DNA of 63,386 nucleotides, counting the filler, from Klebsormidium nitens (taxonomy: Eukaryota > Plantae > Klebsormidiophyceae), in assembly GCA_000708835.1 (NCBI GenBank). It is 4 parts of 4 records of this genome, joined end to end, with 100 filler letters (N's around TTAATTAATTAA, not from the genome) between each part and the next. Parts side by side here need not be neighbours in the genome. Positions count along the whole stretch, not along the records: positions 54,310 to 61,009 come from DF238339.1; 3 more parts are not named here. The stretch is one strand, 5' to 3'. Each line of letters starts with the position of its first letter. Position 1 is the stretch's first letter. A program made the position numbers and the translations under genes. The notes beneath the pieces are model-generated. The model searched no databases and was not told the DNA's origin. It worked only from the letters and a program-made list of their open reading frames with translations. This document shows positions 6,788-61,109 of this stretch, piece after piece.

Positions 6788-9700
6788 CGGGACATCGTCA
6801 ATCAATAGAGCAGCCTGCGGCGGTGATTCTGCCTTTGAGCGTTGCGGCTGAGAGAGGAGGTTGGCAACCAGATTGACGGGAAAACGAGAGAAAGACATGT
6901 TGAAACGGGGAGCAGTGCAATAAATGAGATGACGTTTTCTTGCTCAAGACGAGTACTGTAAGGCATAGTCGGGATCCTCACAGGTTACACGACATTGTAT
7001 TCTAGAACGACATGCGAGTCGGGTACGTCATGGTCGAAGCTAGTGGGTGGATCTTTTTGTTACATCGTGTCAGCTCTCGGATCACAACGGTGTACTTTCT
7101 CAGTTGACCCCATGTGCCTTGGATGCCAGTGAGACAGCTCCCGCGCTAGCTGTGCAGTTGGAGAGAACGAGATTCGGGCGGCATGCTTCACATGTGCATC
7201 TTTTGTAAGACGGCACCGCGCTGCAATTGAACATGTTGGCTGGTTGGCGAATCCGGAGTCTGGCCCGCGGGCATGCCTCGACCTCACGCGATCATTTGGG
7301 GAAGCTTCGATTAAGTATAGTCGGACATATAGTCACTGATGTTTGAGCCGCAGCATGGCTCAGTGGCGATGCATGTTGCACGCGGCACGTACTGCAAGCG
7401 TGAATTATGAGCATGACAAACAGTTGTCGCGCGATCCAGCGCAGCCACTTGTCGACTTGCATGACGGCCGATATCATATGGCGCACCGTGGGCGTTGAAC
7501 GGATCGGATTGCATGCGCATGCATGGTAGTCAAAAGTTGGTTGCGTATACACACAGACCGTCAGATCGATGTGATCAGTCGTTCCTTTCCGGACCACGAT
7601 ATATGCATTTGCGGACCACCCAGACGCCTATCGTGGGTGGCCGCCCTAGCCCGGCCCGATGCCCGATGATGTTTATTCTGATGCACAATATCGTAAGCTT
7701 GGGGTGCGTATCAGCATCCAACCCATTCGCACATGAAGCCAAATGGATCAAATATAAGGTTTTAGACTTCAAAAGTCATTTTTAGCCTTCTTAATTTACA
7801 GGGCAGTTACTCAGGATTAATTCTATGCATGGTGGTTCTGTCAAAAAGTACGATCGGTGTTGTCAGATCATGGGTCCCATGATCTTATACCACCCTGGTT
7901 CAATTTTGCAATTCAATGACGACACCATACATGCAGCAAAGCTGGACCGTCCAATCATGGCGGCTTGCCAGTTGGTGGATTGTAACGGCACACAATAAAT
8001 CATTCTTGGAGGCAGCTTTCTTTGTGAGAAAGTAGTGATAGTCAGCAAGTCATACACCCGTCACACAAGGCGAAGCTTTGCATTGCCCACTGAACGGGCG
8101 GCAATATTACTTGTGCAGACGAATCGTACTCCATCAGGTTCACGAGATTTTGTGGTGGCCGACTGAATAAAATCAGCAAGATGCAGGTCTTGAAAGGGAA
8201 CCAATTTGGGATCTGTGTGCCAAGTGCAATCAGACATGCGTTAAAGTCTACGGCGTATCGGCTGCGGAATGACACAGTACCATAGTAGCCAAGCACATGG
8301 CAAGCAAGAGGAACTTGAAAAGATGGGGCTCGATCGATTCTCTCATGACTCGTCGGACGCTAGAAGTGACTGTGGTGTTCGGAGGCAGGAGGGTGTTCGT
8401 GAGACTACTGGATGCCACTGACGTGGTTGCACCGAACCGCAGACGTACTTGGACGAAAATTTAGACAATTGGGTAAGTAGAAGTGGACAGAGTTCATAGC
8501 TTGCTCATTCGCCGAACCACTTGCGTATACAGGTCGAGCTACATGCAGTGGACGCCGGGCTGCATCAACCTGCATCGGTGACCAATAGTCGACTACCAGG
8601 ACAGAAGCGGGACGAAGGGGCGACGAAAGCATCCGTGTCCTTGCCAGAAAGCTTCAGGACTCAAGTTAAATGGATGTATGGCTGAGAGAACGTACCGTAG
8701 GAAGTTTGTTACTTGTATGTACGAATCGTGCCACGTTGATTGGCAACATATGCTGGTTGCAGTACCGGCGACCATACTTAAGTATGTGCTATAGGTTTGT
8801 GATTTACTCGCAGATTGTATCAAGCGTCCGCTACTACCGGGGTCGCGCTTCATGTAGGACTGCCGTAGGCATTTCAAGTGCCGCCGGACTCGATAAATGC
8901 TCGCGCAGACGATCAGACGCGCTAAACGCAGCGGTAGATGGCTTGGATACTTTTCCATCGACGGCTGAAGCTTCGTTCCCCTCCCGCAGCGCATGTCGTC
9001 ACCAAGCTCCAGCGCTGGTCTCGCGCATCCACATACCGGTATGAGCATGCCCATGGCCCACCTGCTACTGCAAACGTAGTGTCAGAGAGTCAGGGGTGGA
9101 AGCGGATAAGCTGCAGCTCCGCATATTGAACACGGACGCTGGAAAGCGAGGCCGCTGTCGCCAACCTCTCGCGAATGTTCGCCTGAAGGGGCAAGCAGCC
9201 AAATGGCAAAGCGCTTTCAGTGCTGTTGACGCAAAATGCTCCGTGCAGCTGTTGGTGAATGTACAAGCTATGAGAGCCTGGAGGCGAGGACGAGCCTGTG
9301 TTGGATCTTCTGCATCCAGATATACGCGTGACTTGGTTGACGTTCACAGGCTTGCCAGCAGAAACGTGCGCTGAGATTTGCGGCTGCCCATTAGGTTCAC
9401 ATACGACTCGATTAAACATGTCGACTCTCGACTCAGTATAGGCTGGTGACAACAGCAGCTGCTAGCTGGTTATGAAGGTTAGACAGCAGTACCAGCATGC
9501 ACTGCAATGCAGCTGGGGAAAAGTGTCACTGAGACTCCGTGCTTGGATCGAACCATGCTCTTCGTCCCCTTGAGGACAATGCCAATGAGTCTGGCACTCA
9601 ATCTGGTAGAAACGGGGTCCTCGTTATTCATTCTGGAGGATAGGGGTGGACTTGACTCGAGTTTGAAACCTTCAGACAAACGCCACACTGATTGCAGCAG

Positions 9701-9871
9701 AGAGCTCCTAAGGATACTGTGAGCGAAGAAAGGGAGTCTGTGAGAGACAGCTCAGGGGATACAGACTAGTTCTGTCGGTTGCTTGCACCGGCTGCATCGC
9801 GCCAGCTGTGCTCGCAACTATAGGCAGGTAGCACGGTGCTTCTCTCAGCTGCAGAAAAAGGGAACCCCACA

Positions 9872-12126
9872 ATGGCAGGCATGCAGCGCGCAATGACGAC
9901 CTTGCTGCTGCTTTGCTTGGTGGGTGCTGCCTTGCTTGGATCCGCGCACGCTGTTCCCAAGCTTCTGGAGGTGAGTGCCTCCCCATGCAGGCGCCCAACC
10001 TAGTTGCATGGCATCCCTTATTGGCTGCTCCAATCAGCGCAACACTTTTCCTTGAGTTCCCTCTTTCCCACAGCTCTGTCTAAATTCTCCCCAATTTTTC
10101 TCTGCTGCTCCAGAGCTCCGCCCACAACCCAATGCAGCTGAACCTGGCTCGTCATCACTTCGCCGATCACATTGCGCCCATCAGCTCTGGCTCCCTAGCC
10201 CCATCTGACCTGATGTATGCTTCCTTTTGCAGTCTCAACACGTTGGCGAGGCTGATGCACTTGGATCATTAGAGCCAAGCCCAGACAACGACTACTGGGA
10301 GGTAGGTGCATCCTCAACGGCAAACGGGCTCCGTCAGTCTCTGGCCAATGCCATTCTCCTTAACTCCTACTTTTGCTACCATCCTTGTCTTTGCTGCTGG
10401 GTTGTCAGCACTTCCGAGGTCCTGTCCAGCTTTGATGTTACAGAATTGCATCAAGTCGGCCTGTGGCTCTGCCCCTCTAACCTGCTCACTTTGTCGTACA
10501 GCGCCTGTCTGCGGAGGACGTGGAGAACGTGCTGGCGGACGACGACAGCTTTGACGCGCAGCTCTTCACATCTATCTTGGATGCCATCCAGCACAACAAG
10601 CTGCGCAGCCAGGCCGCCTTGGAGGAAGCCGCGCGCCATGCTCTTGAGGGGGGGCTCGTTCGCCACGGCCGTAAGATCAACGGCCAGGTCATCCGATCCG
10701 TGCTCCCCTCCACCGACGCTGAGGCAGCGCTGCTGGCGCACTCCAATGGGGGAGCCCAGCAGTCCGATTTGGACGCAGGCGAGAGCGCGAGCTCTGGGGA
10801 GTCGGTGCAGGTGCAGATGCGACTAGTTGTGGGTCACCTGCACCTGGAGATGCCGTGGGTGCACTGCATGTGGCACCACGTGAAGCAGCTGCTGGGCGGC
10901 CTCTGGACGACCCACGGCGCCGAGCCTGTGGCGGGGCCCAGGAGGCACAGCCTGACCAAGAGGCACGCCGCGGTGGCCAGCCCGTCCGCCCCTCACGAAG
11001 TTCAAGAGGTGAGCCTGATCTCCCATTTTAAATCTTCGTTTATTCCAAGCGATGGTGGGTGCTTTTGTGGTGAGGGCTCGAACAACCTCCGCCTGGAAGC
11101 CGGTTAAAGGTTTGGTCAGAGCCTCCTGAATCTGGTCATCGGATCTGCTCCTCAAGACTTCATTGCTAAGGCTGTAAACTGCCCACTGCGGCGTCCTGCA
11201 TCCTTGTGTCTCATCCATGCATACATAAGCTGCCTTCTAGTTCCTTCATCAAGATGTAGATTTGTTGCCGGATCCCGACTATATTCAGGCACGTTCTGCT
11301 CGTTTTGTCCCCAGTGCCTCACCCTGGACTCTTCCTCGTTCCAGCAGCTCGACCTGTTGACGCGCTCTGGCTTTGCGGACGAGGGCGACGCCGTCCTGGA
11401 CCTGCTCCACCAGTTCGACAGCGGCGACGGGGAGTCGGAGGAGCTGCCCCTGCAGCACGGGCCCGAGCTCAACATGCAGCATCTCAACCGCAAGGTCAAG
11501 ATCTCCGTAATGCGCATCCCTAGCCGGGAAGGTGAGGACGCTACGCCAAAACCCTCGGCTCTTAGGGACAGTGAGAAGAAAGACGTGCGTGACCCTGAAC
11601 CGCGGGCTTAGGAACAGACTTCAGCCACTCTATACAAATGTTCGGATGTCCTGGAGACCAACGGGATCCCCCTGTTGAACAGTGACTCGTGAGCGCCCAC
11701 ATTGGGTTTCTACGTTGCACTTACTAGCCATCAATTCTCCTTTTTCAAAGGTTTCGAAAAGGTACCAGCGTTTGGCTTGTCAGATCAAGGATGGGGGTCA
11801 GTTCGTCGCCCATCCCTTCGTACTCACAGTGACTGACCACACTTCGTCTTGTCCTGGCTGCAGGCCTTGCTCCCCGGTGGGCCCCCCGCTGGTGGACGGC
11901 CGTGAGCGGGCGCTGCGGCGTGCTGCTGTCCGTGACTTTGGTGCTGGTGTTCGTGGTGTCGGGGGCGATCCTGATCCTGTCCGCGCTGCAAGCAGAGGAG
12001 AAAGAGCAGTGCAAAAGCTGCCGGCACCGAGCTGCGGAGTCGGCAGACTGCTCGGGAGAGAGCGATGAAGGGAGCGACTCAGAGGTAGAGATCAAGAGGG
12101 TGGTGACGTACACGTTGCACCAATGA
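9872..12126 (+). CDS. Hypothetical type-I membrane protein (~374 aa): signal peptide, unknown ectodomain, C-terminal TM helix, short acidic tail
   Basis: Exons 9872-9970, 10233-10301, 10502-11008, 11345(or 11348)-11531 and 11864-12126 have consistent phases and GT-AG sites. N-terminus MAGMQRAMTTLLLLCLVGAALLGSAHA is signal-like; VLLSVTLVLVFVVSGAILILSAL is TM-like. No family recognised. Confidence 0.75.
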
Positions 12127-14398
12127 TTATATAAGATCCGAAAGAGCACTGATCATACGTGGCCCCCCTGGGGATCCAAGATTGGCGACCCAACTGGCGG
12201 CCATCTAGCGAGGCAGGAAGGGACCAGAGGGTTTCTCCAGCTCCGCGACAGGCGATTCGCGTGTGCTGTGTGCGTCAACGAGAGCAGTCTTAAGCAGCCA
12301 TGAGCATTCCCAAGCAACCTAACAAAAGTGTAATTAGCGAGGCCGTCATCCAGCTCGATGATGGGCAAAGTAGAGTCCCCGGAACATTTTAACATTTCAA
12401 CAAATGTATAGTCAAACACTAATCGCAAAAGTTTATAGAGTAACTCAAAGAATCAGAGCTAGTCATGAATATTGCTTCATTCGAGATTCACCCCACTGAT
12501 CTCGGACTAAAGCTGTAACAGCCACCAGATGATGTAGTTCTCAAGCTGAGCTGGGATGCGGGGTTGACTTGCGGCAATTTTCCAAGTTTGCCATGCCGGT
12601 GTGCAATATCTGCATCAACCTTCCAACATGAGTGATCGAGCTACTCGTAGGAACAAATAAAATCAATGTAGCGCGTGAATCAAAGATCGATACTGCTTCA
12701 CGATTACAAATCGACCGTCGCGCACCGATATACAGTGACCATACATGAGGCCCGATCAGGGCAGATGTTTTCCAGTATTAATGCGTGCACTGAGTGACGT
12801 TGTCCGATACGTGGCACCGCGGCTCATATTATTTTGAATCAAGTATTAGCTAGATCGATATATACTATTGGTATGTAGGACTCAAGTCGACTTCATTAAA
12901 GTAGTGCATGAAATATGCATGTTCATGAGTGTTCAACCCCATATGGCCGGACTGAGAAAAGCTGCATATCAGTACTCGAGCTTGCTTAATTGATACATAT
13001 AGTAGCAACAGATCCGGTTAGGTTTGATTGCACGTGAACAGTAACCCGGCAGCGTAAATATTGAAGGTGCAATGATACGGCCTCGTCTCAGTCTAGATCA
13101 CGCCACGCGGTCGATAGCCTGAAATGATGTGGAATTGATCAACTGCTTGATCACCGCATGGCCAGATTGATCGCGGCTGGCCCATCGGCCGCCGGCTCGA
13201 TATTGGCTTGCCTCTTCCTCTTAGGAAGAGGGAAACCCATGGAATGGGGCTTTTGGCCACTGTACGACGCCGCGGTGCGCGCCCGGCATTCGACCTGCTT
13301 GATTTGGCTCGGTTCGACGATAGAACGTACAGTGCTTGAACACACATTTGACCGTATAACGGTGCGAGATGTTTTGGACTGGGGCTCCCCGTGCGGCGCA
13401 GTTGCAGCTTACGAAGCGAGCACTCTGGTCCGAGCGTTGCATGGTGCCAGTCTCGAAGTCGGCCTTCGTGCATGTCTCGGTCTTCGACGTCGAAATTTTG
13501 CGCCCGCTCGGTTGGCTGTTTTCACGAGTACGAAATCTACACCGTAGAAAACAAAAATCGCCATTCGAAGCCGGCTGCGATTGTCAACCGTTGATTGCGG
13601 TTATAATCTAGGAAGAGGCAAGCCTTTGCCGTCGCACAGACGGCCATCCATGTAGTGACTCGGAGTAGGAGGCGCGCGGTCATGTGTGTGCAATATATCT
13701 ATAAGCGATCGCAAGCGGGCGTTGAGGTATCAAGCTAGGTTAGATGGTTTGTATATGGTCGGCCCGGGATCCATCCATTATTAGAGTAAAACTAGATTAG
13801 TTGTTGATATATATACGAGCCGATCAGAGGCTGCATAGGGCTTTTTGTTGCTTGTACATCAGACGTCTGAACTTGGTGTGGAGTCTTGTCTGCACCATGA
13901 CAAAGTTTGCCTGACCTGAGAATCAAGCAGTGGAATTTAATTTGTTGAACGTGCATGTACAAAGAGCTCCTTCATTGTTGAGCTAACCCTGAGTCCTCGC
14001 TAGATCAGTTGCTCGTCCCGGTCAAGGCGTCGAATCAATCACCGTTTGGTCTGATTAGTTTTCCTAGCTTATCCTCCCTGTCTCTTGAGTGACCCTTCGA
14101 ACGGCTTACAGGAAGTAAAAGGGCCAGCGTCATTATGGATACATTGAGCAGTTACGCTTACTCTCTGGTTATCAACTGTCAACAGCACCATTGGCGTGCT
14201 AAAAATCTAAAGAGACAGGTCGACGGAAACCCAGCACTCAATCGATCACAGGATCTGATCCGTCCATGCCAAGTGCATGCAAGATGTCCCAAGCCTCGTC
14301 AAAGCTCTGAGGTATTCAGGATCTCCCGTCTGTGATCTCTTTTTCAGTTAATCGAGTCAGTCAATATGCTACACACGCGGTACCGCACCAGTAGCGCA

Positions 14399-17300
14399 CT
14401 ATGGCCCCTCGTTTTCAAGGCGCAAATGCTGTGAAGCAACTTCCGGCGTCCACCAGCCCCGCCACCGGCCGAGCTTCCACGCACGAGCAGCCCACATCTC
14501 CTCCATATCCTACCCAGCCCACATCGAGACCCGGTTAGCCTAACCTTCTTCAGGCCGTTCTCTCGGCACTCCTAGTAGTTTCATTATGCAAGAGGCTTCC
14601 CTGAGCATGGCTCAATCCTCCTCAAGTCAAGCAGAGCTGGTTTGACCTTCACGAAAAGGGAGTCTAAACGCGGCGAAGGCAGCAACGAGCATCCGAATGA
14701 TTGCCTCCCAACATAACGAGAGTTCCAGGGAAAGCTTTGAGTGTGCACACGCGGCTAACCTGCATGGCGATGTTCCTGGTTTCGGGCACGCAAGCCGCAA
14801 CGAAGAGGACTGCCAGCACTGCGACGATGCCGAAAAGCGAGAAGGTGGCGGCGGTGCCGATGGCGGTGGTGAGCGACAGGAACGTCTGCGCCACCACCAG
14901 GTTGGACACCCAGTTGGCCGTCGCCGCCACGCCGCCCGCCGTGCCGCGGAAGCGCAGCGGGTAAATCTCTGCAACAGCAGGAGATGGCGCGCTCAGTCTC
15001 AGAACGAGAGTTCGTCATGCTGCCTCGCTCAAATCGAAAAGCTTCACCGAAGCCGTTGAGTGTTGGCAGCAGACTGCTTGTAGTAAGTGGTCAAAGTGGC
15101 GCTCAGAGAGGACCATCTTTCGTCTTCCAGAGGCTGTCCCACTGCAACGACGGCTTACCCGAATTGACGGCCCAGGGCACGGGCCCCATGCCCGGTGCGA
15201 ATGCCGCGATGTAGAGGCCCAGCCCGGCGAGCGACAGCCAGCCGTAGCGGTTGGGGCACCCGTGCGAGAACCAGGCGCGGCCGGCCCCCTCGCAGGCAGC
15301 ACCGGATGTCGAGTTGAGGACCAGGCAGCTGCCGGGCCACATCTGGACACATAAAAGAGAGGGTGAAGCTGATACGCGATGGAGAGGACACGGCTCGTGA
15401 TGCTGGAAGACGAGGTATACGATCCTTTGTAAGGCCGTGTTATGGTGTTGACGTCTCGGTTCCCAAGGGACTACTGACGTGCATGACATCAGGCGCAAAG
15501 TAAGTCACGCCCAAACACAACATTCCACACATGTTGCTCGAATGACGGGCCCTCGAGAGCCACGACACAGGCAGCTTCGAGCGGCGCCAATTCTCAGAAA
15601 CGACAGCAGTGCAGTGTTTGTGGTATCGTCTTACCTCGTCCCCTGAGGCCGCACAGAAGCCGCAGCTGGCCCCCAAGCAGCTCATGCAGCTGTCGTGGCC
15701 GCCCCCGGCCAGAGCCGCTTTCGGGAGCAGGGGACACTCCAGGCCGGGGTGCGGGGCAAAAGGCCCCGGGGCGACGGCGGGGGAGTCGTGGGCAGCCTGG
15801 TGGAACGAGAAGGCCAGCAAGGCCAGGGCGAGCGTGACGCCGGCCAGGCTGCACAGCACCAGCTTGCGGCGGCCGACGTGGTCGATCAGCAGGATGCCTG
15901 CACACATGCAAGTGGCACCGTGGGCAGGGCGCTCGAAATTCGACTGCAGGAACGGCTTGTGGACTACTCTAGATCAAGGTAGCTGCAGGTTAAAGAACTT
16001 TATACAGCAGAGACCGTCGAAAAAACATATCGGGGTAACACCATGCAATTGGTCCCTTTCAAACTTTCGCCAGAGAACAGCTCATCATACTTGTCACTTC
16101 TTCTGAGTTCGGCCTTGCACCCTTGCAAAGAGACCTGACACAATAGCCAAAGTCACTGCTTCCCGTTCACAAGGATGAGTTCGAACGGATGGCTTACCCG
16201 CAATGGTGCCGGCGGCGTTCATGGCCGCCACGACGAGCGAGAGCAGGAGTGCGGTCTGGTGCGAGGCGAAGCCGGCAAACTCGACGATGGTGGGGCTGTA
16301 GTACATCACCGTGTTGATCCCCACCAGCTGCTGGAACACCTGCACCGCACCCCACACAAAGCTGGCAGCCAGCACACGCGCACTCAGACACGCGGCCAGG
16401 CAGTCGTTGAGACAACTCCCATGCGCGGACTGAGCCACGAAGCACCGTTTCTCGCCCCCGCTTACCTGCAGGCCCACCCCGGCCAGCAGCGCGAGGCGCA
16501 TCTCGGTGGTGGCCACCATGTCCCAGAAGGAGGGGGCCGGCTCCGCGCTCACTTTCTCCGCAGCGGCCACCGCCTCCATGTGCTCCAGCTCCTCCTGAGC
16601 CTCCCCCACGCTGCGCATCCGCAGCAACGCCGCGCGCGCATCCTCCGCCCGGCCCTGCCTGGAGTTGGAAACGTGATTTCTCAAGGCATTCTGGAGGTAA
16701 AATCAAAGTTGATATGGCTCCAAGATCATCTTGTGAGCATCAGAGAAGCCTTTCTCGAGCTTTTTTGAAACGGTTAAGGAGGAGTAAATATGACCATGCC
16801 TTATTCTGAATCAACACAATCAGCTGACAATCTGACGGATTGATGACAAACTTTCTGGAAGCTGGAAGTGAAGGTAACAAATCGATGCTGGGATCCACAT
16901 GATCGCTTTCGTCTTTGAAACAGACAGGCAAACGGGAGGCCTCACATCAAGTTTACAAAAGGCCAGTATTTGGAGGTTGATGGCACAGTGGCTCTCCAGA
17001 ACACCACCTTCAGATCTCACTCTGCAAGTTTAAAAAACAACCCGTGCTGGCTCACCGGAAGAGCCAGCGCGGAGACTCCGGCAGGAAGAGCATGAGCAGC
17101 ATTTGCAGCAGCGCAGGCACCCCCGCGACGCCAAGCATCCAGCGCCAGGTTCCAGGGACAGTCGTGAAGAGGTAGTTGATGATGTACGAGATGAACTGGC
17201 CGGACGTGATCATCAGAACGTTCACACTGACCTGCAGAAGTAGCCAACACCAAGCGTCAAGGAAGTGCCTGTGCCAATAACGTCATCCAACTTGAAGTCA

Positions 17301-54209: not shown

Positions 54210-54721
54210 NNNNNNNNNNNNNNNNNNNNNNNNNNNNNNNNNNNNNNNNNNNNTTAATTAATTAANNNNNNNNNNNNNNNNNNNNNNNNNNNNNNNNNNN
54301 NNNNNNNNNGGATCGGTATGACCACATCTGGCATGATGGCAAGAGGTGCGTGATGATCCAGAAGGGTAAGCGTCATTTGACCTTGCATAGCCCTGCTCTT
54401 CCTCGTGATCAACCTGAACACAACCAGCCTAGGCCCGGCCCGAAAGTAAAAGATACGAGTTCCGTCGGCGGCAAAATTAAATTTCGGCCGACTCTGGGTA
54501 CTTCCGCGCGCTGGGTACTTCGATAATCGATAATTTTCGAAATCGAATATATTCCAGACTGCGACAGTTCGACACACTCATAAAAAGTCGTAAATTTGAC
54601 TTAGCCGAATTCCGAACATCGCGAAATTCCCCGGGCACGAGTAAATTTGTGCCCGGAAGTAGAATGAAGCTCATGTTCTAAAACCGACCACATACCATGT
54701 CACGCTCGGTGAATCAGGCTA

Positions 54722-54778
54722 GCTAGCTATTGTAGACTCATGGTCTCCAAGCTAGCCATTGTAGACTCATGGTCTCCA
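54722..54778. repeat. 29-bp tandem duplication near the left end of the transposon
   Basis: GCTAGC(T/C)ATTGTAGACTCATGGTCTCCA x2. Confidence 0.9.
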
Positions 54779-55055
54779 GTGAAAATTGAATACATGTATA
54801 AGGAGAATAAATTGTGTTCTCAATATGTGCATATGTATGCGACACAAAATGCATATTGCGCGTAATGCATTGCATGCAGTCAGCGAGTGCTTCAGTGTGA
54901 GTCCAAATTCAATGAAATGAATATGTATATAAGAGTGCAATAAATGATTTGAAAATAATTCATTGGATACAATGTAATGTGACTGTGTATCTAGAGTCCG
55001 GCCATTCAAAGAAGCTTTGTGCAACCCTAGCCAGCCATGTCTGATCTTGGCGCCT

Positions 55056-58000
55056 ATGGAGCATCTGAGCTGGGCTGGTGCTAAGCGCCCACGCTCCGGA
55101 TCCGCCGAGTTGTCTGTCCAGCAGAAGGGGGACGTCCTGAAACGAAAGAAATCCGAAATAGCTTCAGCTGCACTTCGCGAACCAGGGGGTAGATTCGCTT
55201 CTACATCTAACAAAATCCAACCTCAACGCCCAGTTGCTGTACGCAGAGCAAGGGAAGCAGAAGTTGTTCAGCAACGTTTTGATAGTTATATTGCTGAAAA
55301 TCAGGCTGTGATAGCAGCATTGAAAGCAGGTCATAGTGAGCAGCTAGAGAATCTGCAAACGAAAATCTTGCAGCTGACCAAACAAGTCTCATCCCTGAGA
55401 GTCAAATTGTCTTATGCGCAGCGCAAAGGCACATCTGGTATACAGATTGCTGGGCTTGTAGGTCGTAGAAAATTGGTTGGCGGTAACAGTAAACCCACAC
55501 AGGTCAAGTTGGCAGGCACCATTGAATCTCTGTTCACATTGGTGTTTGCAAACCCCGCAACCCGCAAATCCGCCCTTTACCAGCACTACCTAAGACATCA
55601 GTCTGACTATGAACTAATCACAGATGCTGCTTTGAACGATCAGGCTGCATTCCAGAGATGCTGTTCTGCCCATCCTGAATGGTTGCAACCCTATCAACAG
55701 GCTGTTGTTAAAGCTATCGAGGACGCCTGGACTTTAGATCAGTGTTTGGCTGCGCAGATCCATTGCAAGATCGGGCACTCTGAAAAGTGGCAGTTTTTGA
55801 TCAATCTTCTGAGCAAAACCTACAACTCGGTAGAGAAGCAGTGGGTTCGCAGGAAGATTTTGGGGAAAGGAAGTAAGGTTTACCTGCCTCTCCTCAAATC
55901 CAAGAACCAGGTCAACGCGCACCGCGCAGCCCTCCATGCCATCATCCCTTTGATCCAGAACGAGGATGGCACCGCCTGCTGGACCGAGTTGCCGCAGCAG
56001 ATCGTCGAGGCTGTGAGGCTCGACCGGGAAAGGGGGTACCTGCGCAGCAATCGAGAGCTTCTCAGAGACTTTCTCTGGCTGCACTGGGGCGGCGATGCAG
56101 CGGGGTGGCTTCGAGGAACTTCTCACAGCATATGGGGGTTTAAGCTCCTCGGGAACAACCGGGTCGTCACCCATTCTCCCAAAGATATGCGGGTAGCCTT
56201 GACCTTCGAGGGGAAAGACAAGTACTCCACCTACTTGGAGTACTTGCAGCCATTCCTAGAGCCCATGCAAACCATGACCACCGAGGGGCTCCAGGTAGAA
56301 AACACCCACTACACAGTGAACCAAACCCTCGGCGCAGACTACGTGCTGATGAGCGAGCTCCTTGGCCATTCCGGAGCGTCAAGTTTAACCGGGTGTTGCT
56401 TCTGCGAGGAGCACAAGGACAACTACGGCAAGACGCACGTGGTTAACGGACGGAGAGTTCCCCTCACAGCCACCCCCCGAACCACCGAGAGCATGGCTGC
56501 AGCTGCGCACCGCCCCTGGACCACAGGCCCTGGCGTTGAGTGCCCCTACTGCCACGAGCAATTCCCCAACCAGGAAGCAGTGGACGCGTCCCAACCCCCC
56601 CAAACCAAGGGGGAAACCAAGAAGTTCCAGCAATCGCATGCGGGAATGAGGTTCGGCACCCCTCCAATCTTCCGATTCCCAATCAGCGCCTACGCAATCT
56701 GCATCCTCCATCTCCTCCTGCGCCTCATGGCGATCACTTTCCACCAAACCATCGCCGTCAACCTCAACACCCCAGAGAAAACGGACGCAGTCAACGCACT
56801 CATCAAAGCCCTCCACTTGGGATGCAAGAAACTCGAGCAGAGAACGGCGAGCGGGGACAAGAAGAAAGATACCACTGACATCAACTTCATCGGAAGGTGG
56901 GTGGGCCTTACTTTTGTGCTGTGTGCATTCTGCGTCTGCGTCTGCTCCCTTGCTCCGGTGCTCCGCGCGTCTTCTCCTCCCTCCTTTGCTGCTCCCCTTC
57001 TGCTCCATGCTCCTGCTCCCTGCTACTCCATGCTCCATGCTGTCTCCTTCTGGTCCGTGCTTGCCATCTAATCATCTTTCTACGCCTAGTCCTACTTTTT
57101 TACCTGCAATCAAAAAGAAACAAACAAGCATATTACTAATGTCTTGCAGAGAAGCTCGCGTGCTCCTGCATCCAACCGCGTACAACGCGTTCCTGGACAT
57201 CGCCATCACAGAGCCCAGCAAGCGGGATGACGCAAGGATCATCTGGGACAACCTCGCGGCTCTAGAGCTACGCTGAGGTGCTCCGCCCCCTCCACAACCC
57301 TGGCGACGACGACGAACGGGAGGCCAAAAGCATCGTGGTCCAAGACAGGGCGGTGGCGTACGTGCACAGCTTCAGCTCGCAGCTAGGGGCGGACCTCGCC
57401 ACCCTCTACATGCATCTGGGGATGGTGCACGTACCTGACATGGTGCGCCGCTTCGCGATCAACTTCAGCGACATGTCACAGCAGTTTGTCGAGCACAAGC
57501 TGAAAGAGGGGAAGACAGATATGCAGCTGTTTACCAACAAGCGGTTGGTAGACGAACGGCAGCAGAAGGGGCGCAACTTGCAAGTGATGGCGAAGGGCAG
57601 GGAACGGCTAGCCCTAGAGCAAACGGTCGCAATGCCGCTCAGCAGAAATGAGAGGCGGTTTATCGGGGACGGAGAGAAGGTTGCAGAGCAGGCGATCGAG
57701 AGAGCTGAGAGGAGGGGCCAGCTGCCAAGCCGGAGCAAAGCACAGCTCGAGAGCAAACTCGAGAAGTTGGGTCCGGATCATATTGCCCGGGTCTACACCG
57801 GGTACGTAGAAATCGTGGAGAAACTTGCCTTTGCCGACTCGGAGGAGTCTCCCGGGGAGCAGAGCAGCGCTCGCTTGAGGGTCGAGTCGGAGAACCGGAC
57901 GCCGGGGGGATTGGAGGGCCTCGGCGGGGACTCCCACCAGGGAGAGGAGGCCGGGTTGGAGGAACCCGCCGCAGCTGGCGTGGGGGAAAGCAACGGGCCG

Positions 58001-58273
58001 GCGAGAGGCGAGGGTGGGGGCGAGGGCAGAGGCGGGGGCGCGGGGGCGAGGGACGCAGAAGGGGTGGCAGAGAGGGGCAGGGGGAGGGGCACGAGCACGG
58101 GCACGGGGAGGGGCGCCGAGGGCAGGGGCGCGGGAAGGGGGCCGCTGGAAGGGGCGCTGGCGCTGGAAGGGGGGGCGCTGGCGGTGGAAGAAGGGGCAGA
58201 GGCCGCGCGGGGAGAATCTCCGCTTCTGCAAGGCCAATTTAGAGTTAGAAAAATAGCCTTAGACAACAAGTAG
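55056..58273 (+). CDS. RAG1/Transib-like DDE transposase; one intron (56897-57149) and a +1 frameshift at ~57262-57266
   Basis: Ordered motifs: WGGDAAG (D at 56094), FEGKDKYSTY, LGADYVLMSELLG (D at 56337), GCCFC (CxxC, 56394-56405), ICILHLL, NFIGR|EAR across the splice, TLYMHLGMVHVPD (HxxxxH, from 57413), SQQFVEHK (E at 57491). Order and spacing match the RAG1 core. Intron has AG|GTGGGT, a TACTAAT branch point and TTGCAG. Confidence 0.82.
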
Positions 58274-58598
58274 ACAATCAAGACAATCAAGAAGCAATCA
58301 GGATTGAACATGTTGACAGGAAACATTGTTTGACATTAGAAGGTGGCATTGTAATCCACCTTCTGGATTGAAGTAGAGAGTGCTGTCCGTCATTGTTGTC
58401 TTTGTTGTCACGTGCTGCCCCCTACGTGCACACTCCTACTCACAGTGCATGCGCCCTACAAACCGGTACTGAGTATGTCCGCACGCAGACGTCTTCAGGT
58501 TATGCATGCACTCTATGGGGTGTGCACTAAAAGGGGGCCAATCACGTTGTTGCAATATGTTGACGGACGTTGCACTCTTGACTTCCATGAACAGCACT

Positions 58599-58669
58599 TT
58601 GATGCAAACAATGGCAATGCAATAGCTAGCTTGATGCAAACAATGGCAATGCAATAGCTAGCTTGATGC
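58599..58669. repeat. 32-bp tandem duplication between the convergent 3' ends
   Basis: TTGATGCAAACAATGGCAATGCAATAGCTAGC x2, plus a partial third copy. Confidence 0.9.
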
Positions 58670-59699
58670 TGTACAAGACATATGCAAGGCAACGTAGCCC
58701 TGCACGCTCACCTTCTTCATTTGGCAGATCGTGCCAACCATCTTCCACACCCCCAGCCTGCATCTGAGCTGCTTGCTGGCGTCTTCTCTCTTCCTGCGGC
58801 CTTGGTTCTGGCCGGGGCATGACAATGTGTTCGTCTCTCATACTTCGCTCAGACCGCGCGTCCCGAGCGGCTTGATCACTTTCATATTCAGATTTGAGAA
58901 TAGCCTCTGAAGCCTCAACCATTTCTGGTGAAACTGCCATCTCCAGATCCTGCAACTCGAGCACACTATCCCTGATCCACTTTTCAACAAAGTCCCACCC
59001 CTGCGCAGGTTCTATCATGTCTTCTGCCTTGCTGATGACTCCAGCAACAGTCATCTTCACCCAGCCATAGACGAAATGGACCCTTGCCCCCGAAGCTTTG
59101 CTATACGTATGGGTGACCTCAATGGGAGGAACGACCACCAAAACTTCCCCTGTGGGGAGAAGCTTGCAGCAACCATTGCCTCTTTTCTCATTGACCAGAT
59201 TAAAAGCACAAAACTCAAGAACCCCCCTGGTTGTTTCCAAAATCCTGACGTGAGTCTCTACAGTGCTTGTCTTTACAGCAGCCTGCTCCCAATCTTCTGA
59301 AAAGATGGCTTCGAAAGCTGGGAGAGGAACAAAAGGCTGTGTGCTCCAGAGAACGCCGGAATGGTTGGTGCCTCCCAACCGCCAGAAGATCTTCCTTCTC
59401 CAGAACGAAGCAATGTCCCGAGCATCATAGAGACACGCAAACTTGCTTGGACCTGCTTCTGTCAGATGGGAGTTGAGGTATTTGACCTGACACTGGGGAC
59501 ACTTCCTTGAAGCCCCCGCAAGCTTCTTTCCGTCCACAGGGCAAAAGGCAAAGGCTCTCCCACTCAGCTCTTTCAGAACAAGACCAAGACGCTTGTCAGC
59601 AAGCTCTTTAAGCTCAACTTTAGTTTTCTTGGGGCGCCGCTGATGGTCATCAGCAAAGCTGGGTTCCTTTCTCCTGCGCCTTTCCAACCCGCCTGCCAT
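58626..59699 (-). CDS. Unknown protein (~357 aa) encoded convergently inside the transposon
   Basis: Long open frame from ATG 59699. Basic N-terminus (RRRRK, RRPKK), Cys cluster CPVDGKKLAGASRKCPQC, aromatic-rich core and acidic C-terminus. Possible donor at 58711 and a 5'-UTR acceptor near 59728. Confidence 0.65.
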   Translation of the reverse strand: MAGGLERRRRKEPSFADDHQRRPKKTKVELKELADKRLGLVLKELSGRAFAFCPVDGKKLAGASRKCPQCQVKYLNSHLTEAGPSKFACLYDARDIASFWRRKIFWRLGGTNHSGVLWSTQPFVPLPAFEAIFSEDWEQAAVKTSTVETHVRILETTRGVLEFCAFNLVNEKRGNGCCKLLPTGEVLVVVPPIEVTHTYSKASGARVHFVYGWVKMTVAGVISKAEDMIEPAQGWDFVEKWIRDSVLELQDLEMAVSPEMVEASEAILKSEYESDQAARDARSERSMRDEHIVMPRPEPRPQEERRRQQAAQMQAGGVEDGWHDLPNEEGERAGLRCLAYVLYSIKLAIALPLFASS

Positions 59700-61109
59700 G
59701 CTCACACAGAGACTTCAAAAAGAACACCTGCAAGCAAAAGCAATACAGGGTTAGCAAGATAATGAGAGAAACGTGCCTTGCTGACGCCCACAGATCACAA
59801 AACAAAGTTAGCAAGTTGATGAGAGAGAGAGTCGCTGGCCCAGCACCCAAAAGAAAACTCAAAACAAAAACAGTGCCATTGCATGATTTCTTGACCAGCC
59901 AACCCCCGACCCCTCTAGCTTTCTTTCAAACCATCAACCAAAACCCTGAAGCATATGTTTGGAGACAAAAGTACTGCCAAGAGCAGTCAGACTGCATATC
60001 AGTCGAAAGACTGGCACCATTTTCTTTCTGAATCAATAAAGAGCAGAAGACCCTTCACCGCGCTCACGCAACGACAGCGAGCATCCTATCAATCCACACC
60101 GAGCAACATGAGCAAGCAGCCAGCACAGGAGCAGCAAGCACAGAAGCCAAAACCAGGCAAAAAGAGCGGACAAGTATTGCAACCCTACCCTTACCTCACT
60201 GTGATTAGATGAAATGCATCTTTCTGCTGTGGTTCTTCAGGCACCTACCCTTTTCGTCCCTATCTTTCTGACTCATCAAAGAACCGACTCGACAAGGAAA
60301 CTGACGTATGGCAGGACATCCAGAAGCTTCTGTTCATGCACAAGAAACTGATGTGACAATGGCACGGAAGCATGGGACCATGTGTTCTGCCAGGCTCCAA
60401 TGCTTGAAATAAACATGCATCGTCTGCATGTTTCGCTCACCTCAGGTCTTGCCTAGAAGCCACAGCCCTTGGAATCTAGGCAAAAGCTCCGGTGAAAACC
60501 TCAGTCGTATCGTCAAGATTGCATGGCGCAGCGCACAGCTTGCAGGTGAATTCCGGTTCCGGAAGACCACATCAATCTGATGTTGGTGATCCTGACCCCT
60601 GCCATGCACCCTGCCAGCCTCTGACAGGTTGGACAGCCACGCAACACCATGCACGACCCAGATCGGCGGCCCACAGTCGGCGACACAGCAAATCCAATGG
60701 TCAAGCTTCGCTGTTTGAAAAATCGGCGGCTAGTTTGCAGCCGCAGGGCGCCTGCCGCCATAAGTTTCAAATTCAAAATAGCTCCTCCAAAGAGGGGCGC
60801 TGAACAGTGACCTTCTTCCTGCTCGAATTCGGCCTATCATTTATCGTGATTTTTGCCGAATTAATTAATTCAACGCCCCAGATTCGCCGACGGCGGCGAT
60901 CTTGGCATCCTACGGTTCTAGCGCGACTGATCACTTTGCCCCTAGGCTGGTTGTGAAGGCGACACTAAAGGATTTGTGTTGTCTGTGAAGCAGTGAAGCG
61001 GCTGGTGCGNNNNNNNNNNNNNNNNNNNNNNNNNNNNNNNNNNNNNNNNNNNNTTAATTAATTAANNNNNNNNNNNNNNNNNNNNNNNNNNNNNNNNNNN
61101 NNNNNNNNN

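What the first reader, a model, noticed from the sequence alone, without database searches (positions are those of the whole stretch)
54419..60955. Complete two-gene RAG1/Transib-like transposon in an apparently algal genome
Seen: perfect CAC-initiated TIRs enclosing a spliced transposase with GGD / EGKD / GADY..CxxC / LH / GREAR / TxYxHxxxxHVP / SxQxxEH in order. Established: the RAG1 core uses D600, D708 and E962 with Zn ligands C727, C730, H937 and H942. Recalled RAG1 segments GYDEKLVREVEG..YICTLC and TNYFHKTLAHVPEI..SEGNESGNK align by eye with GADYVLMSELLG..TGCCFC and TLYMHLGMVHVPDM..SQQFVEHKLK. Transib and ProtoRAG are described mainly from animals. Inference: an undescribed RAG1-like transposon family in the green lineage, with a ProtoRAG-like tail-to-tail layout. 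CxxC/LH/HxxxH motifs are shared by the wider CMC clade (CACTA, Mirage, Chapaev), so the exact placement is open.
Basis: partly seen in the sequence, partly recalled or inferred. Interest (0 to 1): 0.92.

Follow-up and report, generated by a model that had tools for sequence, protein, structure and literature searches.

The report
RAG1-fold two-gene transposon in Klebsormidium
This 6.5-kb piece is a cut-and-paste DNA transposon of the green alga Klebsormidium nitens whose transposase has the same overall fold and catalytic and zinc-binding residues as the immune-system recombinase RAG1, but that fold is shared by a whole known transposon clade, the partner gene is not RAG2-like, and this particular copy carries a frameshift.

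Summary
The piece is a whole 6.7-kb scaffold of Klebsormidium nitens. Perfect 15-bp CAC…GTG inverted repeats enclose a spliced transposase gene and a convergent second gene. The same ends bound five other, diverged copies.

- **Homology:** the transposase is a true remote homologue of RAG1. A family profile hits RAG1 at E=2e-14, a green-algal-only profile at 1.4e-4. An AlphaFold model (pLDDT 87) superposes on mouse RAG1 460–1007 at Z=24.6. D, D, E, CxxC and HxxxxH align.
- **"Complete" is overstated:** a 4-nt insertion (57262–57265) breaks the frame before the ZnH2/E module. An intact copy lies on scaffold DF237217.1.
- **"Transib/ProtoRAG-like" is only partly supported:** the target duplication looks like 2 bp, never 5. 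The TIR is short. The partner protein is neither a Kelch propeller nor any known fold.
- **Fold does not discriminate:** CACTA (Transposase_21) models match the fold about as well as RAG1 does.

It belongs in the published "CMCT" clade (CACTA–Mirage–Chapaev–Transib). Sequence signals lean towards the Chapaev/RAG1 side. No Pfam family covers it. Identity with the moss "Lanisha" lineage could not be tested.

Verdict: a new variant of a known kind, moderately interesting.

The parts
54419..60955 (+). Whole transposon (6537 bp), one copy of a multi-copy, multi-subfamily K. nitens family
   Evidence: TIRs. Equivalent elements at L001 9048-16255, L005 8248-14533 and L003 2151-8306, with partial copies in L002 and L004.
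54417..54418 (.). Left copy of the putative 2-bp target-site duplication (AA)
   Evidence: Flanks read ..ctgAA|CAC and GTG|AAggc... L001 has TC|..|TC. L005 has GC/GG and L003 TC/GT. No 3- or 5-bp duplication in any copy.
60956..60957 (.). Right copy of the putative 2-bp target-site duplication (AA)
54419..54433 (+). Left terminal inverted repeat CACAACCAGCCTAGG
   Evidence: I8, 100% complementary. Identical at L001 9048, L004 9353 and L005 8248.
60941..60955 (-). Right terminal inverted repeat (reverse complement of the left one)
   Evidence: Identical at the right end of L002, with one mismatch each in L001, L003 and L005.
54494..54521 (+). Two subterminal direct repeats CTGGGTACTTC (54494-54504 and 54511-54521). 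Present at all five left ends and absent from right ends. Candidate protein-binding sites.
   Evidence: Alignment of ends. The binding role is inferred.
60904..60915 (-). Right-end-specific conserved subterminal motif (CCGTAGGATGCC on the minus strand)
   Evidence: CCGTnGGAT / CGTnCGAT-like at all five right ends. The ends are asymmetric beyond the 15-bp TIR.
55056..56896 (+). Transposase exon 1. Contains a coiled-coil/basic N-terminus, a helical DNA-binding region, the RNase H-like domain with D347 (56094-56096) and D428 (56337-56339), CxxC (56394-56396 and 56403-56405), an extra C2H2-like site (H 56508, C 56541, C 56550, H 56637) and the CILH histidine (56709-56711).
   Evidence: HMM alignment to RAG1 D600/D708/C727/C730.
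56897..57149 (+). Intron (GT..AG, 253 nt) of the transposase gene
   Evidence: Sequence. The joined reading ..INFIGR|EARVLLHP.. equals P0001, P0004 and P0006. All copies show the same two-block tblastn pattern.
57150..57261 (+). Transposase exon 2, the part still in frame with exon 1
   Evidence: tblastn of P0001 residues 604-652.
57262..57265 (+). 4-nt insertion CTAG (making the palindrome GCTCTAGAGC). It shifts the frame and gives a stop at 57274-57276.
   Evidence: DNA contigs of runs X1 and X2 (one sample, possibly the assembly's own) cover it with 0 differences.
57266..58273 (+). Rest of transposase exon 2, in the +1 frame. Contains HxxxxH (57413-57415 and 57428-57430), catalytic E (57491-57493), a C-terminal helical region and a G/A/R-rich low-complexity tail.
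   Evidence: Aligned to RAG1 H937/H942/E962.
58712..59705 (-). ORF2, main exon. A conserved accessory protein with a basic N-terminus, an FCPxDG..KCPxC motif and an alpha/beta core of unknown fold. Not RAG2-like.
   Evidence: homologues 34-78% identical, no Pfam. AF2 model. No credible structural match. dN/dS 0.08. RNA-library contigs with 0 differences.
58226..58711 (-). GT..AG intron at the 3' end of ORF2. The acceptor lies inside the 3' end of the transposase coding region, so the two transcripts overlap tail to tail.
   Evidence: Joint 58225/58712 in an RNA-library contig. Ends GTGAGC..TTGCAG on the minus strand.

Best explanation
What it is. This is a cut-and-paste DDE transposon of the streptophyte alga Klebsormidium nitens. 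It belongs to the CMCT clade of eukaryotic DNA transposons (CACTA/EnSpm-Mirage-Chapaev-Transib, the clade RAG1 came from). It forms a green-algal lineage that no current Pfam model covers.

The transposase. It is about 900 aa and encoded by two exons. It has the full RAG1-type core: a dimerisation/DNA-binding helical module, a pre-RNase H module and an RNase H domain carrying D and D. A CxxC and an HxxxxH presumably hold one zinc together. The catalytic E sits on the last helix, followed by a C-terminal domain. An extra C2H2-like site is also present.

How it most likely works (inferred by analogy with RAG1/Transib).
1. A transposase multimer pairs the two ends.
2. It nicks next to the terminal CAC and releases the element.
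3. It reinserts with a 2-bp stagger.

End structure. Only the outer 15 bp are inverted repeats. Left and right ends carry different conserved subterminal motifs, so the ends are functionally distinct.

ORF2. A second, convergently transcribed gene encodes a conserved protein of unknown fold. It is probably an accessory DNA-binding or regulatory factor. It is not a RAG2 homologue.

This copy. It is structurally whole, but its transposase is broken by a 4-nt insertion before the ZnH2/E module. It could move only in trans. An intact copy on DF237217.1 is the likely autonomous source.
For: Shown:
- TIRs and multiple bounded copies.
- 2-bp flank identity in the two copies with the best-preserved TIRs.
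- The two-gene convergent layout in all six copies.
- dN/dS of about 0.1 for both genes between subfamilies.
- The 84-sequence family profile hits RAG1 at 2e-14, BbRAG1L at 3e-11 and HzTransib at 0.05. D/D/CxxC/HxxxxH/E align to RAG1 D600/D708/C727/C730/H937/H942/E962.
- The green-algal-only profile still hits RAG1 at 1.4e-4.
- AF2 model: pLDDT 87.4, pTM 0.81.
- The Foldseek top 49 PDB hits are all RAG1, RAG1L or HzTransib.
- VIA-align Z is 24.6 over mouse RAG1 460-1007 and 21.1 for HzTransib, against 12.8 for the P element.
- Clade-wide features (C(2)C, H(3-4)H, CA..TG termini, 2-5 bp TSD) are as published for CMCT (PMC12730594).
- ORF2 is covered by RNA-library contigs and is spliced.
- The frameshift.

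Inferred: the nick/hairpin chemistry, the zinc sharing, the role of ORF2 and of the subterminal motifs, and trans-mobilisation.
Against: - No direct evidence of current mobility: no empty sites or polymorphic insertions were examined.
- The TSD is perfect in only 2 of 4 complete copies (GC/GG and TC/GT in the other two). The 2-bp figure rests on p of about 0.02 (my estimate).
- K. nitens-only profiles do not reach RAG1 by HMMER. The link needs intermediate sequences or structure.
- Placement inside CMCT rests on weak sub-threshold Pfam hits. DUF1280 was hit by 13 of 46 relatives, mostly via a roughly 40-residue motif. RAG1 was hit by 2 of 46.
- No phylogeny with reference CACTA, Mirage, Chapaev or Transib sequences could be built.
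- Sense transcription of the transposase was not shown.
Confidence: 0.85

Rival explanations
1. It is a true member of the Transib superfamily in the broad Kapitonov-Koonin sense (Transib, TransibSU/RAG, Chapaev, Chapaev3). That would make it a green-lineage sister of the RAG1/Transib/Chapaev branch rather than of CACTA/Mirage.
For: - The only known families hit at sequence level are RAG1 and DUF1280 (Chapaev). Transposase_21 and DUF1258 are never hit.
- The profile hit to RAG1 is strong (2e-14) and survives restriction to green-algal sequences (1.4e-4).
- The close environmental relative P0074 hits Pfam RAG1 at 8e-4.
- Spacing is similar: D2 to CxxC is 19 residues in both, and HxxxxH to E is 21 against 20 in RAG1 (RAG1 numbering as established).
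- The terminal CACAA matches the Transib CACAATG in 5 of 7 positions (the Transib consensus is from my own knowledge).
- Kapitonov & Koonin place Chapaev inside Transib (PMC4411706).
Against: - The TSD is not 5 bp.
- There is no Chapa/RING zinc-finger N-terminus. The P0001 N-terminus has a single Cys in its first 140 residues.
- All Pfam hits are below the gathering threshold and cover short motifs.
- HzTransib itself is hit only at E=0.05.
- CACTA models fit the fold equally well.
- No tree was built.
Confidence: 0.35
2. It is a member of, or sister to, the Lanisha lineage described from the moss Ceratodon purpureus (GenBank MT647524). If so, it is an already named streptophyte CMCT superfamily.
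For: - Lanisha is a streptophyte cut-and-paste lineage with EnSpm-like similarity. It is placed in CMCT with uncertain position (PMC8245031; PMC12730594).
- Klebsormidium is also a streptophyte.
- The best ESM-Atlas structural neighbour is an unannotated cluster whose only labelled members are Streptophyta (TM 0.67).
Against: - No Lanisha sequence, TIR or TSD was available to any tool here.
- The named nearest relatives found are prasinophyte green algae (Pterosperma, Cymbomonas). The rest are unlabelled environmental eukaryotes, and none is a moss.
Confidence: 0.25
3. It is an ordinary, divergent CACTA/EnSpm element. The transposase would be TnpD-like, ORF2 would play the TnpA role, and the resemblance to RAG1 would be no more than any CACTA element has.
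For: - CAC termini, subterminal short direct repeats, a two-protein organisation and a plant-lineage host.
- ESM-Atlas Transposase_21 clusters match the model with TM 0.56-0.58 over 489-520 residues.
- A 2-bp TSD is within the CMC range of 2-4 bp (preprint 10.64898/2026.08.26.747230).
Against: - No Transposase_21 hit, even at E<=1, in P0001 and five close homologues or in the 46-member set of P0001 plus distant relatives.
- The termini are CACAA, not CACTA.
- ORF2 is on the opposite strand and is not produced by alternative splicing of one transcript.
- Sequence profiles reach RAG1 directly, which I would not expect of CACTA profiles (my expectation, not tested here).
Confidence: 0.15
4. It is a ProtoRAG-like element in which ORF2 is a highly diverged RAG2 counterpart.
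For: - Convergent two-gene layout conserved in all copies.
- Both genes are under purifying selection.
Against: - The ORF2 model is alpha/beta (two long beta-hairpin sheets plus helices), not a six-bladed propeller.
- There is no PHD finger.
- No PDB hit at E<=0.001, and no RAG2 or Kelch protein among the listed PDB or AFDB hits.
- No Pfam domain was found.
- The ORF2 model is only moderately confident: pLDDT 63 overall and 70-92 in the core.
Confidence: 0.03

Closest known systems
CMCT clade of DDE transposons (EnSpm/CACTA, Mirage, Chapaev, Transib, Plavaka, ESTA, Lanisha; Kojima 2025, PMC12730594)
   Same: [quoted passage not shown]
- 5'-CA..TG-3' termini.
- Short TSD within the 2-5 bp range.
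- RAG1-type multi-domain core fold.
   Different: - Not covered by any Pfam model of the named lineages.
- Has its own conserved convergent accessory gene.
- Has an extra C2H2-like site inside the zinc module.
- Ends are asymmetric beyond 15 bp.
RAG1 core / BbRAG1L (ProtoRAG) / HzTransib (solved structures 6xnx, 6b40, 6pqx)
   Same: - Whole core superposes: Z 24.6, 22.1 and 21.1, with 424-470 aligned residues.
- The catalytic D, D, E and the C, C, H, H zinc ligands align.
- The element terminus starts with CAC.
- Genes are arranged tail to tail, as in ProtoRAG.
   Different: - About 12% identity.
- 2-bp rather than 5-bp target duplication.
- 15-bp TIR without a demonstrable heptamer-spacer-nonamer.
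- No RING or Chapa N-terminal zinc fingers.
- The partner protein is not RAG2-like.
- The host is a green alga.
Chapaev transposases (Pfam DUF1280, PF06918; Majorek 2014, PMC3985635)
   Same: - It is the only transposase Pfam family that recurs in relatives: 13 of 46 plus P0014.
- It is the best-fitting ESM-Atlas structural neighbour carrying a Pfam family: TM 0.72 by hit, rmsd 3.3 A.
   Different: - All hits are below the gathering score and mostly limited to about 40 residues around the second D.
- No Chapa domain.
- Chapaev is described from animals.
CACTA/En-Spm (Transposase_21) of plants
   Same: - CAC termini, subterminal repeats, two proteins and a plant-lineage host.
- Comparable global fold similarity: TM 0.56-0.58.
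   Different: - No Transposase_21 match.
- CACAA rather than CACTA termini.
- The second gene is on the opposite strand and unrelated to any annotated domain.
Lanisha (Ceratodon purpureus; Repbase Reports 2020, GenBank MT647524)
   Same: - Streptophyte host.
- CMCT-type transposase of uncertain position.
   Different: Unknown. No sequence was accessible, so identity or difference could not be tested.

Membership tests
CMCT clade (Kojima 2025) | [quoted passage not shown] | tested here: met
   D347, D428, C447/C450, H552, HxxxxH and E are found in order. They are invariant or nearly invariant across 84 relatives.
CMCT clade (Kojima 2025) | 5'-CA..TG-3' termini and 2-5 bp TSD | tested here: met
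   CAC...GTG termini in all copies. 2-bp flank identity in 2 of 4 complete copies and 1 of 2 bases in a third.
Transib superfamily (strict sense) | 5-bp target-site duplication | tested here: not met
   The 5-bp flanks are CTGAA/AAGGC, GGCTC/TCCAA and TTGGC/GGGTT. None matches. A recent preprint reports Transib relatives with 3-bp or TA TSDs, so this feature is not absolute.
Transib superfamily (strict sense) | RAG1-core-like transposase recognisable by sequence | tested here: inconclusive
   - The family profile hits RAG1 at 2e-14 but HzTransib only at 0.05.
- The K. nitens protein itself hits no RAG1 Pfam model.
- K. nitens-only profiles do not reach RAG1.
Transib superfamily (strict sense) | Long (~38 bp) TIR with RSS-like heptamer CACAATG and an A-rich nonamer (from my own knowledge of Kapitonov & Jurka 2005) | tested here: not met
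   The TIR is 15 bp. The first 5 of 7 bases match the heptamer. Beyond 15 bp the two ends carry different motifs.
Transib superfamily (strict sense) | Phylogenetic placement inside the Transib clade | not testable with these tools
   No reference Transib, Chapaev, EnSpm or Mirage sequences could be loaded.
ProtoRAG / RAG-like transposon | RAG2-like partner (Kelch beta-propeller with or without PHD) encoded convergently | tested here: not met
   The convergent layout is met. ORF2 is alpha/beta. It has no Pfam domain, no PDB hit at E<=0.001, and no RAG2 or Kelch protein among the PDB or AFDB hits.
Chapaev | Match to DUF1280 (PF06918) at the gathering score | tested here: not met
   The best hit in the K. 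nitens clade is 14.1 bits against a 25-bit cut-off (P0014). The best hit among relatives is 23.2 bits (P0097).
Chapaev | N-terminal Chapa zinc-finger domain (Kapitonov & Koonin 2015) | tested here: not met
   The P0001 N-terminus (residues 1-140) is basic/coiled-coil with a single Cys. The AF2 model shows helices only.
CACTA / EnSpm | Match to Transposase_21 (PF02992); CACTA termini; 3-bp TSD | tested here: not met
   No hit at E<=1 in P0001 and five close homologues or in the 46-member relative set. Termini are CACAA. No 3-bp duplication.
Mirage | Match to DUF1258 (PF06869); 2-bp TSD | tested here: not met
   There is no DUF1258 hit. The 2-bp TSD alone agrees.
Lanisha | Sequence similarity to the MT647524 transposase; shared termini and TSD | not testable with these tools
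The papers held give no TIR or TSD details.

The most novel reading that the evidence does not exclude
The element represents a superfamily-level green-algal and protist lineage that branches on the RAG1/Transib/Chapaev side of the CMCT clade. It carries its own obligatory partner protein of a previously unseen fold. If so, the RAG1-type core would be an ancient, pan-eukaryotic transposase design. The arrangement 'transposase plus convergent accessory gene' would have arisen more than once, with ORF2 a functional analogue, not a homologue, of RAG2.
Probability: 0.3. Interest if true: 0.7.

Novelty: new variant of a known kind. Interest (0 to 1): 0.55.

Why it matters
RAG1's ancestry is usually discussed within animals (Transib, ProtoRAG, Chapaev).

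- **Wider range:** this streptophyte-alga family reaches RAG1 by profile sequence search. Its predicted core superposes on RAG1 from the dimerisation domain to the C-terminal domain. Its relatives occur in prasinophytes and in many unlabelled environmental eukaryotes. This widens the known range of the RAG1-type transposase design.
- **Experimental handle:** the intact paralogue gives an apparently complete two-gene element for biochemical comparison. Open questions include the hairpin mechanism, the determinants of stagger length (2 bp against 5 bp) and the use of asymmetric ends.
- **New protein family:** the conserved partner protein has no known fold or domain, and its role is open.
- **Annotation:** about 400 representative proteins now labelled 'hypothetical' can be called CMCT-type transposases.

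The limit on the importance is this: the kinship of CACTA, Chapaev and Transib with RAG1 is already published, and plants are full of CACTA elements.

Tried and rejected
- **Direct family and structure look-ups:** Pfam on the window's own pieces and on close homologues gave nothing. phmmer and K. nitens-only profiles against PDB sequences gave nothing relevant. The RAG1 link appears only with broader profiles or with structure.
- **More full-length homologues:** a word-based search with the C-terminal region found only K. nitens proteins. In other organisms the second exon is evidently called as a separate short gene.
- **ORF2 as RAG2 or a zinc-finger protein:** the ESM-Atlas feature search gave zf-MYND leads at 0.82 with low recognition. 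This was treated as noise. The fold searches gave nothing credible.
- **Fold as a discriminator:** I expected the fold search to separate RAG1/Transib from CACTA. It does not.
- **Lanisha:** the papers held give no sequence, TIR or TSD, and no supplements are held.
- **Taxonomy of distant relatives:** cluster look-ups returned mostly unlabelled metagenome or transcriptome contigs.
- **Longer TSDs:** 3-bp and 5-bp duplications are rejected in all copies. A GGTTGG shared by both flanks of L005, offset by one base, is unexplained and absent elsewhere.
- **ORF2 C-terminus:** reading the spliced ORF2 on into its second exon gives a roughly 190-aa Pro-rich extension antisense to the transposase tail. 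I do not regard this as established coding sequence.

Full report
**1. What is in the sequence**

The piece 54310-61009 is the complete 6700-bp scaffold of Klebsormidium nitens that carries KFL_013900010. That NCBI protein (P0002) is 100% identical to the window's translation and sits on a 6700-bp contig.

A perfect 15-bp inverted repeat, CACAACCAGCCTAGG, lies at 54419-54433 and 60941-60955 (pair I8). By my estimate about 0.02 such pairs would arise by chance in 6.7 kb.

Between the repeats lie two convergent genes.

- The plus-strand gene starts at the ATG at 55056 and runs to 56896. It has a GT..AG intron at 56897-57149 and continues at 57150.
- The joined reading ..INFIGR|EARVLLHP.. is exactly that of the intact paralogues P0001, P0004 and P0006.

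**2. This copy is broken**

tblastn of the intact paralogue P0001 aligns residues 604-652 to 57115-57261 in one frame. Residues 653-885 align to 57266-57979 in the next frame. Four extra bases, CTAG at 57262-57265, form the palindrome GCTCTAGAGC. They shift the frame and produce a stop at 57274-57276.

The stop lies upstream of the HxxxxH motif and the catalytic E. Contigs of DNA runs X1 and X2 (one sample of the same organism, possibly the assembly's own) cover 56846-57353 and 57241-57510 with no differences. The insertion is therefore reproduced outside the assembly, although this is not independent support.

NCBI's gene model avoided the problem with an artificial intron (P0002). 'Complete' therefore applies to the element's architecture, not to its transposase.

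**3. It is a multi-copy, long-lived transposon family**

The same 15-mer, exact or with one mismatch at most ends, bounds equivalent elements on other scaffolds:

| Locus | Element | Note |
|---|---|---|
| L001 (DF237217.1) | 9048-16255 | transposase and ORF2 both uninterrupted apart from the intron |
| L005 | 8248-14533 | complete element |
| L003 | 2151-8306 | left end (11/15 match) confirmed by subterminal motifs |
| L002 | right end only | truncated at the scaffold edge |
| L004 | left end only | truncated at the scaffold edge |

Every copy has the same layout: transposase exon 1, intron, exon 2, then ORF2 on the opposite strand.

The copies are diverged subfamilies. Transposase identity to P0001 is 58-69%, and L004 is about 91-93% identical to the window. 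Between copies, dN/dS is about 0.10 for transposase exon 1 and 0.08 for ORF2. Both proteins have therefore been under purifying selection while the family diversified.

**4. Ends and target sites**

Beyond the 15-bp TIR the two ends differ.

- All five left ends carry two CTGGGTACTTC repeats. In the window these are at 54494-54504 and 54511-54521.
- All five right ends carry a CCGTnGGAT-like motif about 45 bp in.

Flanks of the four complete copies:

| Copy | Left flank | Right flank |
|---|---|---|
| window | AA | AA |
| L001 | TC | TC |
| L005 | GC | GG |
| L003 | TC | GT |

The two copies with the best-preserved TIRs have a perfect 2-bp duplication. By my estimate, two or more perfect matches in four has a chance probability of about 0.02. 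No copy has a 3-bp or 5-bp duplication.

**5. What the transposase is**

Direct searches give nothing. There is no Pfam family and no PDB sequence hit.

An exhaustive profile search found 426 representative proteins at E<=1e-3.

- The nearest named relatives outside Klebsormidium are prasinophyte green algae, Pterosperma and Cymbomonas.
- The remainder come from unlabelled metagenome or transcriptome contigs.
- Across 84 relatives the nearly invariant positions include the second catalytic D, two CxxC pairs and histidines. In the 46-sequence alignment the first D and both histidines of HxxxxH are nearly invariant too, and SxQxxE stands in the consensus.

Profile searches against PDB sequences then reach RAG1.

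| Profile | Hit | E-value |
|---|---|---|
| 84 sequences (A5) | zebrafish and mouse RAG1 | 2e-14 |
| 84 sequences (A5) | amphioxus RAG1L | 3e-11 |
| 84 sequences (A5) | HzTransib | 0.05 |
| green-algal clade plus closest environmental relatives (A8) | RAG1 | 1.4e-4 |

The A5 match has two stretches that put the family's residues on those of RAG1:

- sgDaag aligns with SCDGMG.
- GGDlkf aligns with GYDEKM.
- ypCplC aligns with YICTLC.
- YlHllvaHlp aligns with YLHKTLAHVP.
- sqglEh aligns with SEGNES.

In established RAG1 numbering these are D600, D708, C727, C730, H937, H942 and E962.

An AlphaFold2 model of P0001 residues 130-850 is confident: pLDDT 87.4 and pTM 0.81.

- The 49 best Foldseek PDB hits are all RAG1, RAG1L or HzTransib, with E from 1e-11 to 2e-4. 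The next hit, the P element, is at 0.06.
- VIA-align gives Z 24.6 over mouse RAG1 460-1007, with 467 residues aligned at 3.9 A.
- It gives Z 22.1 for BbRAG1L, 21.1 for HzTransib residues 21-487, 12.8 for the P element and about 8 for Hermes.

The whole core matches, from the dimerisation/DNA-binding module to the C-terminal domain, not just the RNase H fold.

**6. Why this does not make it 'a Transib'**

The RAG1-type core is a property of the whole CMCT clade.

- He also notes that HHpred takes fungal ESTA transposases to RAG1.
- In the ESM-Atlas fold search, three CACTA clusters carrying Transposase_21 match the model with TM-by-query 0.56-0.58.
- RAG1 and Transib-like clusters score 0.59, and a DUF1280 (Chapaev) cluster scores 0.57. 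Fold alone cannot place the family.

At sequence level the only known families that ever appear are DUF1280 and RAG1.

- DUF1280 equals Chapaev according to Majorek 2014 (PMC3985635).
- DUF1280 was hit by 13 of 46 relatives, with a best score of 23.2 bits against a cut-off of 25. The hits mostly cover about 40 residues around the second D.
- RAG1 was hit by 2 of 46. P0074, a close relative, hits the ZnH2/E region at 8e-4.
- Transposase_21, DUF1258, KDZ and Plavaka are never hit.

This leans towards the Chapaev/RAG1 side but is weak. Several specific hallmarks fail:

- There is no 5-bp TSD.
- There is no long RSS-like TIR.
- There is no Chapa/RING N-terminus.
- No Pfam match reaches the gathering score.

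**7. The second gene**

ORF2 (58712-59705, minus strand) has homologues at 34-78% identity, none with a Pfam domain.

- It has a basic N-terminus, an FCPxDG..KCPxC motif and a conserved core.
- Its AF2 model has pLDDT 63 overall and 70-92 in the core. It is alpha/beta, not a propeller.
- Foldseek finds no PDB hit at E<=0.001. In AFDB it finds only weak matches to uncharacterised proteins, with TM below 0.5.
- It is therefore not RAG2-like. Only the orientation resembles ProtoRAG.
- RNA-library contigs identical to this copy cover ORF2. They show a GT..AG intron at 58226-58711 whose acceptor lies inside the 3' end of the transposase coding region.

I infer that ORF2 is an accessory DNA-binding or regulatory factor, by analogy with TnpA of En/Spm or the Myb-like protein of PIF/Harbinger. 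This is not shown.

**8. Mechanism**

Shown:

- a DDE/zinc catalytic core of the RAG1 type;
- defined ends beginning with CAC;
- a short target duplication;
- two genes under selection;
- several diverged subfamilies retaining the same termini.

Inferred:

- paired-end cleavage next to CAC, with a hairpin intermediate as in RAG/Transib;
- a 2-bp staggered integration;
- recognition of the asymmetric ends through the subterminal motifs;
- dependence of this frameshifted copy on transposase from an intact copy such as the one on DF237217.1.

**9. Novelty**

The kind is known: a CMCT cut-and-paste transposon. The lineage appears undescribed in the literature I could search. No Pfam model covers it, and its partner gene has no known relatives.

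It may coincide with, or be sister to, the moss lineage Lanisha, which I could not test. I rate it a new variant of a known kind, of moderate interest.

The 'Transib/ProtoRAG' framing and the 0.92 score overstate the case.

Noticed in passing
window 55031-57055 (minus strand): One contig from an RNA library (run X7, record 18) joins 55031-55135, 55883-36 and 56909-57055. In full, the middle block is 55883-56036. The skipped stretches end CT..AC on the plus strand, which is GT..AG on the minus strand. This suggests a spliced antisense transcript across transposase exon 1 and its intron. It could be read-through from ORF2 or a regulatory antisense RNA. Depth is only about 3.
   Followed up: partly
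window 57262-57265: The frameshifting 4-nt insertion CTAG creates the perfect palindrome GCTCTAGAGC. It could be the footprint of another element's excision or a small duplication.
   Followed up: no
window 56508-56639: The transposase has a second, nearly invariant H..CxxC..H set (H485, C496, C499, H528) inside the zinc module. In profile searches it resembles a classical C2H2 finger (Aart and designed zinc fingers). It may be an additional zinc site not present in RAG1.
   Followed up: partly
window 54721-54778 and 58599-58662: A 29-nt tandem duplication lies upstream of the transposase start. A perfect 32-nt tandem duplication lies inside the ORF2 3' intron. The two pairs are about 71% reverse-complementary to each other and share AGCTAGC..ATTG (D6, D8, I1-I4).
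   Followed up: no
window 57950-58200: The transposase C-terminal tail is a G/A/R-rich low-complexity repeat (GGGGCGAGGGC-type units, families D1, D4 and D5). The antisense frame is open and Pro-rich, and the spliced ORF2 transcript would read through it.
   Followed up: partly
L001 2487-4770 and 5436-8342: Next to the intact copy on DF237217.1 lie two genes. One has a D5_N domain (primase-helicase N-terminus, typical of large DNA viruses and related elements). The other has a weak KDZ transposase match. This may be another mobile-element or viral insertion cluster.
   Followed up: no
L005 8240-8247 and 14534-14541: Both flanks of the L005 copy contain GGTTGG, offset by one base (..acGGTTGGc|CAC and GTG|gGGTTGGgg..). 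This is not seen at other copies and is unexplained.
   Followed up: no
AFDB cluster hits: The closest AlphaFold-DB fold clusters to the transposase are uncharacterised proteins. They include entries annotated only as 'Zinc finger PHD-type', 'SAP domain', 'BTB domain', 'CBS domain' or 'Phosphotransferase'. These look like unannotated CMCT-type transposases or domesticated derivatives.
   Followed up: no
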